From: Salpingoeca rosetta
Lineage: Eukaryota > Protista > Choanoflagellata
Assembly (NCBI GenBank): GCA_033442325.1
Contig: JAWQFM010000013.1
Coordinates: 1,378,298 to 1,401,179, forward strand
Direction: 5' to 3'
DNA: 22,882 bases
This document shows positions 1-22,882 of this stretch, piece by piece. Numbering within the stretch: position 1 is the stretch's first letter; each line of letters begins with the position of its first letter. A program made the position numbers and the translations under genes. The notes beneath the pieces were generated by a model that was not told the origin of the DNA, ran no database searches, and worked only from the letters and a program-made list of their open reading frames with translations.

Positions 1-90
<90 letters not shown>

Positions 91-3607: not shown

Positions 3608-6062
3608 AGCAACACATGCACAACCGTTCACAACCGTTCACAACTGCTCGCACCCACACACACGCACAACCGTTCACAAACTCTTCTCACGTTTACATTC
3701 GCCCCGCCCCCCCCCCCTCCCCGCAGGGCACCTTCTTCTCTATTCCTCACCTGGCCTGCGCGTGGTGCTGGTGCGGCATTCCTTGACCTGGGCCTGGCAT
3801 GCGCTGTGCAGGGGAATACCCGCCATAGCCGTACCCGCCGGGCTGGCCCATGCTCATAAACGCCTGTGACGCCACCGGCGTTGGTGGGCCCTGCGAGACG
3901 TGCGGCTGGTACATCTGCTGCGGCTGCTGCATGGGCTGCTGCATGGGCTGCTGCATGGTGTACGGCGTGGACGTGTAGGGTTGCATTGGCATCATCATCA
4001 TGCCTGGCTGTGTCGGTATGTACTGCGGCTGCTGCTGTTGCTGCTGTGGGAACTGCTGCTGTGGGCGTGGCTGCTGAAACATGCCCATGCTCGTGGGTGG
4101 CATGTGCATGCCTGCAGGCGCGGCCGGCTGCTGCTGCTGCTGCTGTTGCGGCGGAATGTATGATGGGATCTGGGTAGCGGGGGACAGGATTGTGTGCACG
4201 AGAAGCCGAAACGGTGTGAGAGCAGGATTATCAGACAAAACTCTGACGCGTGAACACGTATGGAACACCCACATGTGCACACCCACCCACACCCACATGT
4301 GCACACCTACATGTGCACACAAACAGGAGGGCGACTCACAAATTCCTCTGCGTTTGGGTCCAGCACGGGCTTTGGTGGTGGGGCTGCTTTCGTGTCTGCT
4401 GCCGTTGGTGCTGCTTCCTTCTGCTGACCTTGTTCTCCCCCTGTCTCCTCCTTCTTGTCTTCCCCACTGGTCGCCGTGGTTGTGGCTGTGGTCACTGCCG
4501 CTGCTGGCGTCGTTCCTGCTTGTGTGGTGGCTGCTGGTTGCGTCGGCTGTGATGCGGGTGCCCCCGTTGTCGTGACCTCCTCGCCCTTCTTCGTCGTCTC
4601 CGCTGCAGCATTACCGCCCGTCTCCTGCGCGTGTGCACCGTTGCCACCGCTTGCTGTTGCTCCAGCAACACCTGCATGGCATGCGTGTGAGTGTGTGTGT
4701 GTATGTGTGTTTGTGTGTGAAGGTGATGTGTGCAGATGGGTGTGTGCAAATGGCTGTAACACTTGAAGACAACGTGCTTCCGGTTTCAGAAAGTACTGCA
4801 CCACTACAGCAACAGCCATCTTGCACCCTGCCCCAACTCTGCGCCACGAACCAAATTGGATGGACTTTGAGAATTCCGCAAACTGCTTCTTCTCCTGCTG
4901 TCGTACCTGCAATGATGGTGACAGTGATGGTGACATGCAACGCACGGCATGGGAGATGGCTGTGAGTGCATTGAAGCCGCGAGAAATTGACAAGGAGTCA
5001 CAGTACATGGGGGAAACCAAACTCTACACGCCGTATACACCGTACACCACTGTGCACGGCAAACAAAAGCCACTGCACACAGCAACAGATGATCAAAGCA
5101 GCGTACAGCTTTATCAGGCGCGGATGCCTGCTGCTGCTGCTGCTGCTGCTGATCGTCGCGTGTGACGGCGCTGTACTTGTCCTGCAAGTCAGCAACGCAT
5201 GAGGCGCGGCGGTGAGGCCGTGAAGAGAATGACGAAAAAGTAACAATGAGCAAGCACGTGCACACCCACACCCACACACACACCCACACACCATCTCTCT
5301 GTAACACACTCGCACACACGCACACACATCCATTCGAACATGCACACACGCGTGCACACGCACAAGACGCGCCAGCACTGACGTCGTCTGAGCGGTTGAT
5401 GTCGGCCATTGTGCGCCCGCTCTTCTTTCCTTTCCCTGAACACACACGCAGAGTTGCAGTTGCACCCGCACCAGATATGCGATGAGGACACAAACACGAA
5501 CCAGCAGCACTCAACGTGATGCACCGCAAATGCATGCGCCCGTGCGCCCTCCACCCCAAATTTGTACGCACACACATATCCATGCACACACGCACACACG
5601 CATGCACACATGCACACACACACACACGAGGGCCCACCTCCGGTGATTTGGCGGGCGAGGGAGTTGGCGGCGGCAATGTCGGCCTTTGACAGCTTGCTCT
5701 CGTCAAGCATCGTCCTGGCGGTGGTGACAATGGTGATGATAGTGGTGGTGATAGTGGTGGTGATGATGGTGGTGGTGACGTGAGGAATGAAGCACGAGGG
5801 CTTCAAGGAAAGTTGCACGAGCATGTACACATGTATTCGCATTTAAAAACACACACAGGCACGGTAGCCACACCAATAACAATCACATCAACCATCCCAC
5901 ACTCATACACACTGACGTGTATTGGGATTCGTCAAAGGACACGTCAATGCCAAACTTCTCCTTGTTCGTACGCAGCATGTCCTCTGCTGACCAGCCCTGA
6001 TGCAAGTCCATACATACACACGTTCAGACACAATAACACACGCAAAAAAAATTCACCGTGTG

Positions 6063-6159
<97 letters not shown>

Positions 6160-6671
6160 TTGCGGTGTCGACGCACCCCTGCCGACGATGATCCCTCCAG
6201 AGTGTCCAGCGTGTCGTCTTCGCCAGAGGCAACCCACCGCTACAGAGAACCAAGCAGTGGCACGGAAAAGGCAGTGTGGTGGTGATAGCGGGGTGTGAAT
6301 GAGCACATGCACGCACACAAATGCAAACATACTCCACCCAATGCACACACACACGCGTGCATGCATGCGTGAGCCTACAGGAGGCACTGACCGTGAACTT
6401 GCGGGGCTGGTTGGAGGGGGCGGTCTTTGAGATGCCGGCGTCGGTAAACTCGTCCAATCCTGTGTCTGCGGTTGCCATTCGCGCGGGATTCTGTGCAACG
6501 GATATGTCGACCTGCGGCAGATGCACCTGGCCAATCTTCTTCCACTGACATGCAGCACAGGCACGGCACGCGCAAGTGGACACGTGTCAGTGCGTGAGAC
6601 GGCGGTTGACGCGCAGCGTGTGTTCGCACAATCACGCACACACGCACACACACACGCTCATACACACACAG

Positions 6672-7915: not shown

Positions 7916-12427
<4,512 letters not shown>

Positions 12428-14961: not shown

Positions 14962-16079
14962 CCATCATCACCATCATCATCACCATCATCGTCGTCGTCG
15001 TTGCCATCCACAATGCATTTGCTGCACAGGTCGGTTTCCGCCCATCTCGGGCCAGTATTCCCAGGGAATGCATGATCTGATCAACTCGCTCCTCGCAAAC
15101 GACCCAAGTGCCCGCCCCTCCGCCGCAGAGGTGATGGTCACAACACACATACTCATGGTGGTCGTGGTGATGACGATGGTGGCAGTGTTGGTGACCATCG
15201 TCGAGCGTTGGTGGTCGCGGTGGTGGTCTTGGTCATCGTCATGATGATGGCGATCAATGCTTGTGCTCGCAGCGAGTGCTTGACGTACACGCCTTTGTTC
15301 GTCATGCATCTCCCTCCTCCTTCAGCTTTATCACACCATCAAACACCCCATCCACCCTCACTACCCGCCATCACCACCTCGCACCACCACCCGCTAGATC
15401 CTGCACCGGGAGTTTGTGAAGACGTGGTGCTACGAGAATCTGCTGGAGCGGCGGCGGTCCCGGCACTCTTCCGCTTCGTCACTCGCAGCAGCACCCACAC
15501 ACCACCAGCACCAACAACCACAGCAGCAGCAGCACGATCAGACGTTCACCGCGGGCGATGCACCGGTTGCAAACTCCAATGCGCTCGCGCGCGTGCGCGG
15601 CGGATCTGAGAAGCGGCGGTCGCCTCTCCATCGCGTGGAATCCGTGGAAGGCCAGGGCCCCATGCCGCAGCCTCGAAAGCTAAACGCATTTACAAGCAGC
15701 GAGATTGTCATGCCACAGAACAAACAGGAGACGCAACAAACATCCGTTCAAGACAACGTGTTCCGCGCAGTGGATCCTGTGCCCACAGCGGTGTCCTTCT
15801 CAGTTGACATTGCACCACCAAAGCGGTGTGTATGTGTGTACGAGTAAATGTATGTGTGCTTGTGCGCGCGAGTATGTGTGCGTGTGGTGTGTGGATGTGT
15901 GTGTGTGTGTGTCTGCATTCTGTTCCACTGCTGATGCGTGCACGTTTGATATGCATGCACTTGATTTTCTCCCACGCATGCCGGCCTCCATGCACTTGAA
16001 TGTTTGCACAGGAAACCGCCCAAGAAGCGGCAATCCCTCGCGCCAAAGCAGCAGGTGCGATTACCCAAGCCATGCCATG

Positions 16080-16119
<40 letters not shown>

Positions 16120-19100
16120 AAAAAAATACACAAAAACACACACACACACAAACACACATGCACTGCTTTCAGCACACACGCGCACGCTTGATCGCATACC
16201 CACGCGCGCCTTCCCTCGTGATCCACCACCGATTGCCACTTGTTCCACAGTCGAAAGACACTGGACGCACATCACCAACGAAGAGCAAAGCAACGGCCAG
16301 CAAGACAGGCAAACCTTCAGGCGACACAGCGGCAACGAAAACATCAGCACCATCGTCATCATCAGCCACAACAGCATCACAAGCAACATCATCAAAACCA
16401 ACGACAACTACAACAACAACAGCAGCATCTCGCGGTGGTGGTGGGAAGAGCAGAACCCGACGTGTTCTAGCAGCCGCGTTTGGTGGACGCAAGAAGAAGG
16501 CAGCAGCAAATCGTGATGGTGGCACAACGACCAAGCCGGTGAGCACAGGTGGCGGTGATGGTGATGATGGTGACGCCCTGGGAGCAGACTTTGGAAAGAC
16601 GATGGTGGTGTCGAAGACAAGCAGTGACAAGGATGGCGCTGCAAGTGCACCACCAACAGCAACGGCGGCAGCGACGGTGACGAAGAAGGGTGGGCGACCA
16701 CGGCGATTGCTGCCGTCTACGACACACGTGCGCGCCGCGGCAGCCACGCGGTCACGCACGTCGTCATCGTCATCCACCGGATCCGTCACGTCCACAGCAT
16801 CAGCGCCCGCAGGGGAGGTGGGGAGAACACAGGCAGCGGTGAACGGCAGGACACGCAAGCTCAACTCCACCACCACGACAACCACAGCCACCACAACAAC
16901 AACGAGGACAACAGCAGCGTCGTCGGGGCTGAGAGGGCCGAGGACGAACGCGAGGGACCGCCGATCGGTCGGTGGCATCACGCTCGGGCGCACAGTCGCA
17001 GTTGGCAGCAGTGGTGGTAATGGCATTGGCAGTGGTGCGAAGAAGACAAAGGCGAGGAGGAGTGTTGGTGGTACGGGTGCTGGGCGCAGGTCCACGTCAC
17101 CGTCCATGCTCAAATCGACGACGACGAAAGCCAACGCATCCACACGATCATCTCAGTCGCCATCAGCACCATCAGCGTCGTCATCATCATCATCATCATC
17201 GTCAACGGCAACGACAAGTCGATCGCGTCGCTCGATGACGACGAGGGAAATCATCCACGACAGCGATCTCAACAGGAAGCGCCAGCAGATGCGCAAGGAC
17301 GCAAAGGCGCGGCGTGAGGAGGAGAAGAGAAAGCTGCAGGTTTGTGTGTGCATGTGTGTGTGTGCGTGCGTGCTTGTGCTTGTGTGTTCGTGTGCGTGCG
17401 TGCGTGCATGTGTGTGTACGTGCGTGCTTGTGCATGTGTGTGTTTGTGCATGTGTGTGTGCGTGCGTGTGTATCTGTGTGTGCGTGTTGGACATGCCCTC
17501 CCACCAAGCAGATGACCGCATGCGTGATCACTTTATTTTCTGCGCAACAGGAGCACGAGCGACGGGTTCGCCAAATACGGCAGGCCGGATCAAAGGTGCA
17601 GGTCGTGCGCAAAGGTGGGGCAAATCACACAACACACGCACATATGCAACATGGACGCCTGTACAAACACACACACACACACCTGCACACACACCCAACA
17701 CACACTTTCTCCCCTGCATAGACACAATCGCACGCGTGCGCTGTCGTGTTGGACCACTGCAGGCCCGTCATCATCATCATCATCACACACTGCGTCTTTG
17801 CCCTCTAACAACAACAACAACAACAATTCAGGCAACAGGAAGCCACAAGCGCAGCGTGGGTCATCCCCCAGCCAGCAGCAGCACGAGGACACTGATGCTG
17901 ATCACAATGGCGGTGATCGTGATGGTGACGACATGACAGCACCAGCGTCTCTCGCCCGACCCGTGGGCCGCGCCGGCCTCCGCCAGCAACCACCAATGAC
18001 AGCGACCGACACAACAGCGGCGTTTGATGATGGTGATGGTGATGGTATAAGCACGTCCACGACAACCATCAAGACATCGTTGCCGTCGGCAGGGGCGCCC
18101 GCTGATGTGAAGGAGGGTGAAGCGCAGGACGCGAGCGAACGCGCGCGGAGGCGAGAGGTACTGCCATACGCACACTGCTGGTGTTGCTGTTATTGTTGCC
18201 GTTGTGGTGGTGTGCGTTCAATGGTTTCTGCGTGTGTGACAGTGACTGTGTGTATGCGTGTTCGTGTGTACGTGTGCTCACACGTTGTTATAACTCCGGC
18301 CTTTTCGCTTCACAGGAGCAGCGCAAGTCACTGCGTGCGCGAATGCGCGAGGGACGAAAACGCGTCAACAAAGAGCAGGACATTGTTGTGGTGCGTCATT
18401 TGCTGCCAAAGGAGAAAGTTTGTGCACTCGTGTCCCTGGGTGTGAGAGCAAGACTGATAGTTCTTGGCATGTCTGCTCATGGAGTGCCATTTCTGTATGT
18501 CAAGTGAAGAGACAGCGTACTTGCGTGTGTATGCGTGTGTGCACGTGCCTGAATGTGTACATCTGTGTATATGCTGACGAGATACACCTGCTGCATCTCT
18601 CAAACCAACTCCGAAATGACAGGAAATCAAACTGAGCGACAAGGTCAAGTCAATGCAGCATCGGTACGTGCACTGCAACAGCGATTGCATCCGCTGCGCT
18701 GCTCTGAGACAGACCTTGTTTGTGAAATTAACACCGCTCCAACTCCATTCTTTGACTGTGTGTGTGTGTGTGTATGCTTGCTTGCGTGTGTGCGTCTGTG
18801 CTTGCTCGCGTGTATGCGTGTGCTGTACCTTGTCTTATCGTATTGTATTGTGTATGCAATGCTACGATAGCGCCAGAACGCGTGATGCCCCAGCACGCGA
18901 GCGGGTGCGCGCTAAAGACGATGGAAGCGACGCGACCTCGGATTCAGAGGCAGAGCAGGACCGCCATGATGTGCAGGTGAAGTTGCTGCTGCTGCTGCTG
19001 CTCTGCTGTGGCTGCTCTTGCTTGTTGTCGCTTGTGGTGCTGTTGTTATGCGAGTGCCTCCGCCATCTGTGCGCGTGTGCGTTTCTGCATCCACAGCTGC

Positions 19101-20696: not shown

Positions 20697-21372
20697 ATGT
20701 GTAGACAACTTGATTGTCTATCCACCTGCATTCCCCCCCCCCCACACACACACACACACCCTCGCTTTCGTGTTACCGGTTCATCGAATATATTCTTGAC
20801 CATGCGTTTCAGTGGTGTTTCTGAAATGAACACACGCTCCTCCGTCCATGTATCATGCATACATGCATGCAGCTTGCTCTCATCAGCGCAGTGCTCGAGT
20901 CAAATGGAAGTCTCCGACATAACAATTCAAAACACTCTGCCAACTTAAATGCTTGATTCGTTTTAGTGCGAGGAGGGAAGGAAGCGACACAGGACCAGCA
21001 GCCATCATCATTTCACACACAGGACAGAACAGGACAGAGAGAGACAACGCCTCACAACAGGGGGTTAAGCAGACATCCAGGTCTTTTGCGGTAGGGAGGT
21101 GAATATATGTAAACAAAAACAAAACCCGTCATGGCTGGCACAGCAGGACAGCAAAGCAAGGAAGGAGGGGGGGGGGGTCAAACAGACAGGTGAATGAAAA
21201 GAAACGCAGATGAACAAAATGGTGCAACAAGCAAGCAAGCAAGCATGGTCATCATCCCGTCGTCGTCGTCGTCGTCGTCATCGTCGTCGTCGTCACAGAG
21301 AGCAAAGCAGCAGCCGGCACTGCCTCTGTCGCTGCTGCTGGTGATGCCTCTGCTGTCAATTGCTGCTGCTGC

Positions 21373-22740
21373 TTAGACGGACTCAACGGCGGAGGACGAG
21401 GAGGAAGAGGCGTTGGCGCGGTGCTTGGCGAAGAAGACGCCACCAACAACAGCGCCAACAAGCAGCAGCGCGCCAACCACAATGCCGGCAATGGCGCCCG
21501 CAGAGAGGCCTGCAGCGGCATCCCCAGCGCCAGAGGCGCCAGAGTTGTTGTCGGCGTAGGCGTAGTCGTTCTTCGTCGTGTACTCGTTCTTGGGCGCCTC
21601 GTAGGCCGTCGTGTACTCCTGGTGCTTGGTCGTGTACACGGGTGGCTTGGTGGTGTAGACTGGTGGCTTGGTGGTGTACACGGGGCGTGTGGTGTACACG
21701 GCCTCTGTCGTGTACACGGGTGGCTGCGTGGTGTACACGGGTGGCTGCGTGGTGTACACGGGGCGTGTGGTGTACTCCTGGTGCTGGGTGTAGCGTGGGT
21801 AGGCGGGCTTGGTGGTGTACTTGGGTGCCTCGTAGGCGGTGGTGTACTCCTGGTGCTTGGTGGTGTAAGCCTTCTTGGGTGCCTCGTAAGCCGTGGTGTA
21901 CTCCTGCTTGGGTGCCTCGTAGGCGGTGGTGTACTCCTGCTTGGGTGCCTCGTAAGCCGTCGTGTACTCCTGCTTGGGTGCCTCGTAAGCCGTGGTGTAC
22001 TCCATGTGCTTGGTGGTGTAAGCCTTCTTGGGTGCCTCGTAAGCCGTGGTGTACTCCTGCTTGGGTGCCTCGTAGGCGGTGGTGTACTCCTGCTTGGGTG
22101 CCTCGTAAGCCGTCGTGTACTCCTGCTTGGGTGCCTCGTAAGCCGTGGTGTACTCCATGTGCTTGGTGGTGTAAGCCTTCTTGGGTGCCTCGTAAGCCGT
22201 GGTGTACTCCTGCTTGGGTGCCTCGTAGGCGGTGGTGTACTCCTGGTGCTTGGGTGCCTCGTAAGCCGTGGTGTACTCCTGGTGCTTGGTCGTGTACTCC
22301 TGGTGCTTTGGTGCGACGTAGGCGGTGGTGTAAGCCTTCTTGGGTGCCTCATAAGCCGTGGTGTACTCCATGTGCTTGGTGGTGTACTCCTGCTTGGGTG
22401 CCTCGTAAGCCGTCGTGTACTCCTGCTTGGGCGCCTCGTAAGCCGTGGTGTACTCCATGTGCTTGGTCGTGTAAGCCTTCTTGGGCGCCTCGTAAGCCGT
22501 GGTGTACTCCTGCTTGGGCGCCTCGTAAGCCGTGGTGTACTCCTGCTTGGGTGCCTCGTAAGCCGTGGTGTACTCCTGCTTGGGCGCCTCGTAAGCCGTG
22601 GTGTACTCCATGTGCTTGGTCGTGTACTCCTGGTGCTTGGGCTGATAAGCCGTCGTGTACTCGTGCCGCTGATAATCGGCAGCCATCGAGCCCGCAGCAA
22701 GCAGCAGGCACGACGCCACCGCAAACACCAACACGCGCAT
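21373..22740 (-). CDS. Uncharacterised intronless single-pass cell-surface protein with Tyr/Thr-rich tandem repeats (EYTTAYEAPK, PPVYTT), 455 aa
   Basis: ATG in ccagccATG context; signal peptide MRVLVFAVASCLLLAAGSMA; about 20 AYEAPK and about 39 YTT units (hand count); TM GLSAGAIAGIVVGALLLVGAVVGGVFFA (21510-21427); 17-aa tail KHRANASSSSSSAVESV then TAA. Many repeat variants differ at synonymous third positions in this frame, and codons are strongly C/G-ending. Confidence 0.9.
   Translation of the reverse strand: MRVLVFAVASCLLLAAGSMAADYQRHEYTTAYQPKHQEYTTKHMEYTTAYEAPKQEYTTAYEAPKQEYTTAYEAPKQEYTTAYEAPKKAYTTKHMEYTTAYEAPKQEYTTAYEAPKQEYTTKHMEYTTAYEAPKKAYTTAYVAPKHQEYTTKHQEYTTAYEAPKHQEYTTAYEAPKQEYTTAYEAPKKAYTTKHMEYTTAYEAPKQEYTTAYEAPKQEYTTAYEAPKQEYTTAYEAPKKAYTTKHMEYTTAYEAPKQEYTTAYEAPKQEYTTAYEAPKQEYTTAYEAPKKAYTTKHQEYTTAYEAPKYTTKPAYPRYTQHQEYTTRPVYTTQPPVYTTQPPVYTTEAVYTTRPVYTTKPPVYTTKPPVYTTKHQEYTTAYEAPKNEYTTKNDYAYADNNSGASGAGDAAAGLSAGAIAGIVVGALLLVGAVVGGVFFAKHRANASSSSSSAVESV
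21575..22665 (-). repeat. Coding minisatellite: 33-bp unit (QEYTTAYEAPK) organised into a 153-bp higher-order repeat
   Basis: Marker gtaagccttcttggg recurs at 21865, 22018 and 22171 (exact 153-bp spacing = 51 aa: KAYTTKHMEYTTAYEAPK + 3 x QEYTTAYEAPK). Confidence 0.93.
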
Positions 22741-22882
22741 GGCTGGTTGTCACAAAAGAGGAAGAAGAAGAAGAAGAAGAAGTGTGCGCTGGCGGGTGGC
22801 TGGAAGTCACGCAGTTCAAATCAGGGGGTCTTGGTGGTTCTTGGTGCGTTGGATGACAGCTGAGAAAATGAACATCTCATCC

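What the first reader, a model, noticed from the sequence alone, without database searches (positions are those of the whole stretch)
21373..22740. Intronless Tyr/Thr-rich repeat surface protein: candidate cross-linkable coat or adhesive protein
Seen: signal peptide, about 390-aa ectodomain, TM helix and 17-aa tail. By hand count the ectodomain is roughly 17% Tyr and 20% Thr, rich in K/E/P/H, with no Cys, Trp, Phe, Leu or Ile in the repeat region. It is the only gene here without CDS introns (the neighbours have many) and has strong C/G-ending codon bias. Established: Tyr/Lys/Pro-rich repeats are typical of oxidatively cross-linked or DOPA-modified structural proteins (mussel foot protein 1 AKPSYPPTYK; plant proline-rich wall proteins PPVYK, close to KPPVYTT here), and Thr pairs are mucin-type O-glycosylation sites. 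Inference: a highly expressed membrane-tethered glycocalyx/theca/adhesive component, possibly retroposed or horizontally acquired. I recognise no family for it.
Basis: partly seen in the sequence, partly recalled or inferred. Interest (0 to 1): 0.78.

Follow-up and report, generated by a model that had tools for sequence, protein, structure and literature searches.

The report
Tyr/Thr-repeat surface protein family, unannotated
This is a real gene of the choanoflagellate Salpingoeca rosetta for a membrane-anchored surface protein built almost entirely of short repeats ending in Tyr-Thr-Thr. It belongs to a species-restricted family of about 15 genes that public protein sets lack, apart from one mis-joined "aquaporin" model, and its function is untested.

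Summary
Window 21373-22740 (minus strand) is an intact 455-codon ORF. It encodes a signal peptide, about 389 extracellular residues made of 39 units ending in Y-T-T (20.6% Thr, 17.2% Tyr; no Cys/Trp/Phe/Leu/Ile), a TM helix with four GxxxG motifs, and a 17-residue Ser-rich tail.

Variation falls at third codon positions, and the TM differs from a paralog subfamily mostly by synonymous changes, so this frame is under selection.

The genome is S. rosetta. The gene is one of about 15 related loci:
- six near-identical "A" copies, of which three are intact;
- three intact "B" copies;
- multi-exon relatives in which a short YTT segment is the stalk under Cys-rich modules.

The A/B genes are therefore stalk-only derivatives, spread by segmental duplication. 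Retroposition and horizontal transfer are not supported.

No intact member is in a 15-billion-protein collection. The only public model (XP_004993627, "aquaporin") is a chimera made across an assembly gap. An exhaustive HMMER search found no relatives outside S. rosetta.

Most likely it is an extended, probably O-glycosylated cell-coat protein. It fails the usual mucin composition rule, and the role of its Tyr residues is open. Membrane-anchored tyrosinases in the genome keep the cross-linking idea alive but unproven. There is no expression or modification evidence.

The parts
21373..22740 (-). Complete intronless CDS, 455 codons plus stop (stop at 21373-21375)
   Evidence: frame under purifying selection
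22678..22740 (-). Signal peptide, aa 1-21 (MRVLVFAVASCLLLAAGSMA|AD)
   Evidence: Hydropathy window 1-23; small residues at -3/-1; nearly identical in A paralogs and about 50% identical in B paralogs. No SignalP run.
21811..22677 (-). Distal repeat array, aa 22-310: 11-mers AYEAPK(Q/K)(E/A)YTT mixed with 7-mers KH(M/Q)EYTT and two 12-mers; higher-order 51-aa (153-nt) unit
21859..22164 (-). Two adjacent 153-nt super-repeats (21859-22011 and 22012-22164) identical at every base: a very recent tandem duplication
   Evidence: 0 differences; a third copy at 22465-22617 differs at 7 nt
21574..21810 (-). Membrane-proximal stalk, aa 311-389: KPAYPRYTQ, then 6/7-mers (R/Q/K)P(P)VYTT, then KHQEYTT and AYEAPKNEYTT. 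This segment is shared in order with all subfamilies
   Evidence: the heptad pattern is found only in family loci (71 hits vs 0 control)
21511..21573 (-). Juxtamembrane linker, aa 390-410 (KNDYAYADNNSGASGAGDAAA), with one N-x-S sequon at N398
21427..21510 (-). Transmembrane segment, aa 411-438 (GLSAGAIAGIVVGALLLVGAVVGGVFFA), with four GxxxG motifs; the core LS-GA-A-IVVG is invariant in 9 family members
21376..21426 (-). Cytoplasmic tail, aa 439-455 (KHRANASSSSSSAVESV), with a Ser run and a C-terminal E-S-V
20981..21372 (-). 3' flank of about 390 nt, conserved at 91-93% in paralogs A2 and A3 (probable 3' UTR); contains the (CGT)12 microsatellite at 21258-21294
22741..22882 (-). 5' leader/promoter-proximal 142 nt with a CT-rich tract, conserved at 95-98% in paralogs. 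The sequence served to me reads N from the window end onward

Best explanation
The ORF is a functional S. rosetta gene for a type I membrane protein whose whole ectodomain is an amplified stalk. In multi-exon relatives in the same genome, a short Thr/Tyr-rich segment with Y-T-T units sits between Cys-rich extracellular modules and a conserved TM helix. In subfamilies A (this gene) and B, the Cys modules are gone and the stalk units have been multiplied by unequal crossing-over to 23-41 copies. In A, one membrane-proximal unit (AYEAPK-x-x-YTT) was the unit amplified. The product is most likely an extended, largely unstructured and probably O-glycosylated brush on the cell surface, that is, a cell-coat or glycocalyx component. 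It would be held in the membrane by a GxxxG-rich helix able to self-associate or bind a partner, and it has a short Ser-rich tail. Shown here: the gene structure, the family, selection on the reading frame, the duplication mode, and the absence of relatives elsewhere. Inferred: surface location, glycosylation, an extended conformation, and any role of the regularly spaced tyrosines.
For: ORF, signal peptide, TM and tail. Frame-specific selection. Family of about 15 loci. Ordered motif homology with the C36 multi-exon gene, and the invariant TM core. The heptad signature is confined to the family (71 vs 0). Segmental duplication including flanks. Identical 153-nt units. B paralogs meet the published PTS composition rule (45-49% S+T in the best window) and all members fall on the disordered side of the charge-hydropathy boundary: criterion from PMC4948705. 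S. rosetta has a C1GALT orthologue (PMC8022947), and its surface binds jacalin (PMC6322860); from my own knowledge, jacalin prefers O-linked Gal-GalNAc. Environmental type I proteins with Ser/Thr stalks share the same LS-x-GAIAGIVVG start of the TM. The nearest language-model clusters are the TM mucins MUC21 and MUC22, a lead only at 0.80.
Against: The A ectodomain has only 21% S+T (best 100-aa window 27%), so it fails the usual mucin rule. The 11-mers lack Pro at +3 of the Thr pair. The Pfam Mucin-like hit passes threshold for this copy only (34.9 vs 28.7 bits); it scores 22.6 for A3 and gives no hit for B. AF2 draws regular structure at pLDDT about 80-90. There is no transcript, protein or glycan evidence, and no intact member is in public protein sets. 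The promoter region upstream of this copy reads N.
Confidence: 0.6

Rival explanations
1. Cross-linkable coat or adhesive precursor. The regularly spaced tyrosines would be oxidised by surface tyrosinases or a haem peroxidase to DOPA/quinone or dityrosine, tanning the cell coat or tying the membrane to the theca or substrate. This is compatible with the main reading and would add a mechanism to it.
For: 17% Tyr with 10% Lys at fixed spacing. The genome has at least 6 tyrosinase-domain loci and one animal-type haem peroxidase. Three of the tyrosinases end in a TM plus short tail, so they are ecto-enzymes. One of them lies about 1.1 kb from a family member on C7, and its tail starts F-KHRAN-RSAS, against FFA-KHRAN-ASSS here.
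Against: The conserved TM and tail argue for a resident membrane protein, not a secreted wall precursor. The ectodomain is net acidic (K+R 43, D+E 50), unlike basic mussel proteins. There is no sequence homology to any tanned protein. The adjacency and the KHRAN match are single observations that could be chance.
Confidence: 0.2
2. A folded repetitive rod, not a disordered mucin: an alpha-helical rod with a tyrosine stripe in subfamily A, whose 11- and 7-residue units match helical periodicities, or a beta-hairpin stack in B.
For: AF2 single-sequence models give a helix over residues 3-304 at pLDDT about 80 and 12-residue beta strands at pLDDT 80-92 in B1. Tyr shows a 3.6-residue periodicity, and only 1.6% of unit-order shuffles keep the phase as well. 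The low S+T content fits poorly with a classical mucin.
Against: Homologous subfamilies receive opposite secondary structures. The five AF2 models range from 65 down to 27 mean pLDDT. The atlas's ESMFold model has pLDDT 0.32. There is a Pro every 11 residues and beta-branched Thr pairs. Foldseek finds no match for the B model. Regular structure on perfect repeats is a known single-sequence artefact (my own knowledge).
Confidence: 0.12
3. Not a functional gene: an accidental ORF across a coding-looking minisatellite, or a family of decaying pseudogenes.
For: No public gene model, transcript or literature mention. Long ORFs also exist in other frames. Some copies are broken: A4 by a 1-nt loss, A6 truncated with substitutions, A5 interrupted by a gap.
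Against: Six intact copies keep the signal peptide, TM and stop codon. Variation lies at third codon positions, and synonymous changes outnumber non-synonymous ones in the TM between subfamilies. B repeats use many synonymous codons for the same heptad.
Confidence: 0.05
4. Origin by retroposition or horizontal transfer.
For: Intronless in an intron-rich genome.
Against: The paralogs share promoter-side and 3' non-coding DNA, and no poly(A) remnant was seen. Multi-exon relatives in the same genome share the last-exon module. Codon usage is native. No donor-like relatives turned up among 1.84 billion representatives.
Confidence: 0.03

Closest known systems
Small transmembrane mucins of animals (MUC21/epiglycanin, MUC22, podoplanin)
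   Same: Type I topology, with an ectodomain made almost wholly of short Thr-rich tandem repeats, a single TM and a short tail. Repeat number varies between copies. These are the nearest clusters by language-model features (0.80). There is a weak Podoplanin profile match over the juxtamembrane/TM part (E 0.002).
   Different: No homology: all scores are below family thresholds or within the noise range, and there is no Epiglycanin_C or SEA domain. S+T is only 21% and Tyr is 17%, which no animal mucin repeat shows. Glycosylation is untested.
Lineage-specific surface mucin gene families of protists (e.g. Trypanosoma cruzi TcMUC; Pfam PF01456)
   Same: A species-restricted, multi-copy, rapidly expanding family of Thr-rich repeat surface proteins. 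There is a weak compositional PF01456 hit for paralog A3 (E 0.002).
   Different: TM-anchored rather than GPI-anchored (GPI anchoring of TcMUC is from my own knowledge). About 15 loci rather than hundreds. Tyr-rich. No homology.
Mussel foot protein 1 and other DOPA or quinone-tanned Tyr-rich repeat proteins (e.g. flatworm eggshell precursors)
   Same: Two Tyr per 10-11-residue repeat, together with Lys, Pro, Ala and Thr. The genome encodes tyrosinases.
   Different: Net acidic rather than strongly basic. Membrane-anchored rather than secreted. No sequence relation. No evidence of DOPA.
Plant proline-rich and extensin-type wall proteins (PPVYK-type repeats)
   Same: A few membrane-proximal heptads read (K/Q)PPVYTT.
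   Different: Only about 5 such units are present, with no Ser-Pro(3-5) blocks, no Pfam extensin/PRP hit and a TM anchor. The resemblance is a short motif only.
Fungal and protist 'Ser/Thr-stalk + GAIAGIVVG TM' type I proteins (environmental hits L029-L045; Dissophora protein P0043)
   Same: The same start of the TM segment, (G)LS-x-GAIAGIVVG, beneath a Ser/Thr-rich stalk, followed by a basic stop-transfer sequence.
   Different: They have no YTT units (0 in all 17) and low Tyr. The similarity is confined to about 30-45 residues, so common descent cannot be shown.

Membership tests
Mucin-type (PTS) domain protein | Ser+Thr typically at least 40% and Pro above 5% across the domain (PMC4948705) | tested here: not met
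   The A1 ectodomain has S+T 21.2% and P 8.9%, with a best 100-aa window of 27%. The B paralogs reach 45-49% in their best window and do meet it.
Mucin-type (PTS) domain protein | Tandemly repeated, low-complexity extracellular region | tested here: met
   39 YTT-ending units; TRF periods 21, 33 and 153 nt
Mucin-type (PTS) domain protein | Dense O-glycosylation of Thr/Ser | not testable with these tools
   Context only: a C1GALT orthologue in S. rosetta (PMC8022947) and jacalin staining of the cell surface (PMC6322860)
Pfam PF16058 Mucin-like | Score above the gathering threshold, reproducible in close relatives | tested here: inconclusive
   34.9 bits vs 28.7 for A1, but 22.6 for the 96%-similar A3 and nothing for B. 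The match tracks repeat number and composition.
Podoplanin (PF05808) | Profile match above threshold | tested here: not met
   18.9 bits vs a cut-off of 30, limited to the juxtamembrane/TM residues 378-437
Mussel foot protein 1-type DOPA adhesive | Secreted, strongly basic Tyr/Lys/Pro decapeptide repeats | tested here: not met
   TM anchor present. K+R 43 vs D+E 50 in the ectodomain. No sequence relative.
Mussel foot protein 1-type DOPA adhesive | Tyr converted to DOPA | not testable with these tools
   Only enzyme capacity is shown: tyrosinase-domain loci
Plant PRP/extensin | PPVYK/PPVEK or Ser-Pro(3-5) repeat arrays in a secreted wall protein | tested here: not met
   About five xPPVYTT heptads only, no SPPPP, a TM anchor, and no Pfam hit
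Tyrosine-sulfated, O-glycosylated lectin ligand (PSGL-1-like) | A tyrosylprotein sulfotransferase in the genome | tested here: inconclusive
   The best Sulfotransfer_3 ORF (C16) matches the CurM sulfotransferase in the PDB, not TPST. The weaker exon-sized hits were not examined.
S. rosetta YTT-stalk family (defined here) | Y-T-T-ending units, ordered proximal motifs (PAYPRYTQ .. PPVYTT .. AYEAPKN-Y) and the LS-GA-A-IVVG TM core | tested here: met

The most novel reading that the evidence does not exclude
The YTT-repeat proteins are the membrane-tethered substrates of S. rosetta's membrane-anchored ecto-tyrosinases. Periodic Tyr oxidation to DOPA or quinone would tan or glue the cell coat, for example by fixing the thecate cell to its theca or substrate. 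[quoted passage not shown]
Probability: 0.12. Interest if true: 0.75.

Novelty: new variant of a known kind. Interest (0 to 1): 0.42.

Why it matters
S. rosetta is the main experimental model for the unicellular ancestry of animals. Its surface and matrix proteins govern rosette formation, clumping, attachment and theca building.

About 15 genes are involved here, including six intact "stalk-only" genes. They are invisible to every study that relies on the reference proteome, whether RNA-seq quantification, proteomics or comparative genomics. The one public model that touches the family is a false aquaporin fusion.

Correcting that is of immediate practical use. The unusual Tyr-rich chemistry also gives a concrete, genetically tractable candidate for the poorly understood cell coat, theca and adhesion biology of choanoflagellates.

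Tried and rejected
1. **Family and structure libraries:** Pfam gave only compositional or TM-level hits and the PDB sequence search gave nothing.
2. **Cys module:** Pfam on the Cys-rich modules of the multi-exon relatives found no family.
3. **Relatives outside S. rosetta:** the word-based search and the exhaustive HMMER search returned only compositional look-alikes. P0018 (Tara metatranscriptome) and P0002 (JGI) share xPPxYTT heptads, but their non-repeat parts have no counterpart in this genome.
4. **Metagenome DNA scan:** one contig (L028) is a colinear 97.5% copy of the C31 locus. It is genomic DNA, not a transcript. The other 17 hits match the TM only.
5. **Structure prediction:** the A and B models contradict each other and have no Foldseek match, so I did not use them for fold assignment.
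6. **Literature:** nothing on the accession numbers, and nothing on the gene in two thecate-transcriptome papers or their supplements.
7. **TPST check:** inconclusive.
8. **KHRAN tail motif:** shared with one tyrosinase but absent from the other five, so I treat it as possibly chance.
9. **Correction:** in my working notes I first placed the gap in copy A5 at L015:4738-4856. The correct run is L015:4756-4855, 100 N.
Full report
**1. Observation**

It runs from 22740 down to 21373 on the minus strand, 455 codons plus a stop.

The translation has these parts:
- a hydrophobic N-terminus ending in SMA|AD, which I read as a signal peptide;
- about 389 extracellular residues;
- a 28-residue hydrophobic segment (aa 411-438, GLSAGAIAGIVVGALLLVGAVVGGVFFA) containing four GxxxG motifs;
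- a 17-residue tail, KHRANASSSSSSAVESV.

It has no Cys, Trp, Phe, Leu or Ile.

Cutting after every Y-T-T resolves the sequence into 39 units. The distal units are 11-mers, AYEAPK(Q/K)(E/A)YTT, interspersed with 7-mers, KH(M/Q)EYTT. The membrane-proximal block holds KPAYPRYTQ followed by 6/7-mers, (R/Q/K)P(P)VYTT.

A 51-residue (153-nt) higher-order unit is present. Two adjacent copies (21859-22011 and 22012-22164) are identical at every base, so the array expanded very recently.

**2. Is it a gene?**

Repeats without stop codons leave open frames on both strands, and ORFs of 480-498 aa exist in other frames here. The frame therefore has to be argued.
- Among the 18 11-mer units, variable columns fall 1, 1 and 7 at codon positions 1, 2 and 3.
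- Between subfamilies A and B, the 27-codon TM core differs at 8-9 codons synonymously and at only 3-4 non-synonymously.
- In the B genes, one heptad (QPPQYTT) is written with many synonymous codons.
- Only this frame gives a signal peptide, a TM segment and a stop, and six paralogs preserve all three.

I conclude that it is a protein-coding gene under purifying selection. No transcript evidence could be obtained (see section 6).

**3. Organism and family**

The assembly is 55.4 Mb. The one strong database relative is Salpingoeca rosetta XP_004993627/EGD74065, whose aquaporin exons match a nearby locus at 100%.

Searching the genome with the protein, and with two back-translated patterns, gives about 15 loci.

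- **Subfamily A** is near-identical to this gene.
  - Three intact copies: this gene (455 aa), C13:1659935 (297 aa) and C13:1644419 (400 aa).
  - C13:1049321 has a one-base loss in a C-run, which may be real or a homopolymer error.
  - C13:1600868 is cut by a 100-N scaffold gap.
  - C31:495746 is a 5'-truncated copy.
  - Evidence: - **Subfamily B** has three intact genes on C8 (372-406 aa).
  - The repeats are TTEAPAYTT/TKAYTT and QPPQYTT.
  - A two-Cys remnant sits near the membrane.
  - The TM is the same.
- **Divergent members** lie on C36, C31 and C7 (three loci).
  - They are multi-exon genes: a signal-peptide exon, then one to three exons each encoding a Cys-rich module of about 45-50 aa (..C-x-WDY-x-x-x-C..; no Pfam match).
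  - A last exon carries a short YTT/Thr stalk, the TM and the tail.
  - I searched these exon by exon by reference and did not join them into a spliced model.

The C36 last exon shares the ordered motifs of this gene: PAYPRYTQ, PPVYTT, AYEAPKN-Y, Y-A-ADN, SGASGA and GLSAGAIA-IVVGA. In C36 the AYEAPK unit occurs once. Subfamily A is therefore best read as a stalk-only derivative in which that one unit was amplified.

The heptad signature YTT-x-PP-x-YTT occurs 71 times in the genome against 0 for the reversed control, always inside family loci. The TM pattern GA[IV]AGIVVG occurs 13 times against 0. Twelve of those hits are in the family and one is in a receptor-tyrosine-kinase-like gene on C21.

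**4. Origin**

The A copies share at least 310 bp of upstream DNA in all copies, about 1 kb between A2 and A3, and about 400 bp of downstream DNA at 91-98% identity. This is DNA-level segmental duplication that includes the promoter side.

GC3 is 0.84, against 0.71-0.84 in six other S. rosetta coding samples. The 97% C/G ending at two-fold codons is at the top of the range (0.73-0.91), but it is inflated because the repeat units are copies of one another. Together with the multi-exon relatives, this makes a native origin the clear reading.

**5. Relatives elsewhere and annotation status**

None of the intact A or B proteins is in a collection of about 15 billion proteins, whether full length or started at Met19. 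The ESM Atlas does hold a record equal to residues 19-455, of unknown origin.

The word-based search found only the chimeric XP_004993627 and one metagenome protein with KPPAYTT linkers.

An exhaustive phmmer run over 1.84 billion representatives gave 52 hits at E <= 1e-3. Only two reached 1e-30: the chimera, and a Nucella lapillus protein with unrelated NYTTMFQGMNA repeats. All the rest are Thr-rich linkers of other periodicities. B-type proteins, which score about 117 bits against this query, are absent from that library.

Two environmental proteins (P0018 from a Tara metatranscriptome and P0002 from JGI) carry true xPPxYTT heptads next to Cys-rich or acidic domains. Only the heptads match this genome, so homology is unproven.

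The single metagenome DNA scan found one contig (FUWD013148131.1) colinear with the C31 locus at 97.5%. That is a close strain or an unassembled duplicate, and it is genomic, not a transcript. The other 17 hits share only the start of the TM under Ser/Thr stalks and have no YTT units.

The public "aquaporin" model is explained as follows. The 100-N gap at L015:4756-4855 removes the 3' end of copy A5, and the model splices the repeat ORF onto the separate aquaporin gene, whose own ATG lies at L015:5448. An extracellular repeat joined directly to the cytoplasmic N-terminus of a MIP channel would also be topologically odd (my own knowledge of aquaporin topology).

**6. What it probably does**

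The architecture is that of small transmembrane mucin-like proteins: signal peptide, repeat-only ectodomain, one TM and a short tail.

Points in favour:
- The stalk origin described in section 3.
- The B paralogs satisfy the published PTS rule of thumb, at least 40% Ser+Thr and more than 5% Pro (PMC4948705), with 45-49% in their best 100-aa window.
- All members lie on the disordered side of the charge-hydropathy boundary.
- S. rosetta has a core-1 O-glycan synthase orthologue (PMC8022947), and jacalin stains its surface (PMC6322860).

Points against a classical mucin reading for this particular gene:
- Ser+Thr is only 21%.
- Ala, Glu, Lys and Gln together make up about 42% of the ectodomain.
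- Pfam's Mucin-like model passes threshold for this copy only.

Structure prediction did not settle the matter. AF2 in single-sequence mode draws one long helix over the 11-mers (pLDDT about 80, with the five models ranging from 65 to 27). For the homologous B1 protein it draws beta hairpins (pLDDT 80-92), and it leaves the heptads disordered in both. The atlas's ESMFold model scores 0.32, and Foldseek finds nothing. The Tyr residues do show a 3.6-residue periodicity that unit-order shuffles match only 1.6% of the time. I therefore keep a folded-rod rival at low probability.

The tyrosines are the unusual part. For oxidative cross-linking, the genome offers one animal-type haem peroxidase and at least six tyrosinase-domain loci. 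Three of the tyrosinases end in a TM plus a short tail, so they are ecto-enzymes. One lies about 1.1 kb from a family member on C7, and its tail begins F-KHRAN, as here. Against this reading, the protein is net acidic, it is anchored rather than secreted, and both the adjacency and the pentapeptide are single observations.

For tyrosine sulfation (E-Y context), the best Sulfotransfer_3 ORF resembles the CurM sulfotransferase and not TPST, which is inconclusive.

No paper mentions the public accession. Two thecate-versus-swimmer studies do not list the locus in their text or in the supplements held here.

**7. Verdict**

The thing itself is a new Tyr-rich variant of the known kind "repeat-only type I surface glycoprotein". 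It is organised as a species-restricted family of about 15 loci that is effectively absent from public annotation. Interest is moderate. The practical value for S. rosetta work is clear, and there is a testable but unproven link to surface tyrosinases.

Noticed in passing
L015:3869-7800 (G000:C13:1600868-1604800): The public S. rosetta protein XP_004993627/EGD74065, annotated 'aquaporin' (538 aa), is a chimera. Its first 285 or so residues are YTT-repeat paralog A5, truncated by a 100-N scaffold gap (L015:4756-4855). The rest is a separate MIP-channel gene whose own start (MMVNENTYLL) is at L015:5448.
   Followed up: yes
L022:2447-7912 (-) = G000:C7:262946-268411; also L025, L027: Three of the six tyrosinase-domain loci are long open frames (1275-1822 aa) ending in a TM segment plus a short tail, so they are predicted membrane-anchored ecto-tyrosinases. 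The C7 one has a signal peptide and a long Thr-run region, lies about 1.1 kb from a YTT-family member, and has a tail starting F-KHRAN-RSAS, like the window protein's tail. Two others (L023, L024) end in Kazal-like Cys modules.
   Followed up: partly
L012:900-1880, L014:900-2340, L013:2960-3802, 5946-6536 and 9486-9833 (-): A repeated Cys-rich extracellular module of about 45-50 aa, one per exon (pattern ..C..Y....C......C.WDY...C..), has no Pfam match. It may be an undescribed choanoflagellate domain.
   Followed up: partly
L021:995-4129 (+) = G000:C21:439494-442628: A receptor-tyrosine-kinase-like gene has a Cys-rich region, a very long poly-Thr stalk, a TM starting GAIAGIVVG (the same motif as the family) and a kinase domain.
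   Followed up: no
window 22883 onward (G000:C13:1401180-1402537), L004:3566-3591: The sequence reads N from exactly the window end, 142 nt upstream of the ATG, for at least 1358 bases (a gap or a withheld stretch). Three of the five C13 copies abut N-runs, so copy number and repeat lengths of this family may be under-assembled.
   Followed up: partly
L028 (contig FUWD013148131.1, 1467 bp): An environmental contig is colinear with the C31:495746 locus at 97.5% identity. It keeps an intact KPPVYTT unit and the conserved TM Gly, where the reference copy has KPLVCTT and Ser. This suggests a second S. rosetta-like lineage or an unassembled duplicate, and decay of the reference C31 copy.
   Followed up: partly
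window 21258-21294: A (CGT)12 microsatellite lies in the presumed 3' UTR. On the plus strand it forms part of a spurious 60-aa poly-Ser ORF (21194-21376).
   Followed up: no
window 15684-17933 (+): A 750-codon open frame is rich in Ser/Thr/Ala/Gly/Lys/Arg low-complexity sequence, is bounded by GT/CA microsatellites, and has only a weak OPT hit (E 0.02).
   Followed up: partly
window 21376-21390; L013:2373-2390 (-): The tails of subfamily A (..AVESV) and of one C7 member (..AQDSV) both end in [D/E]-S-V, which resembles a class III PDZ-binding C-terminus (my own knowledge). The other members end differently.
   Followed up: no
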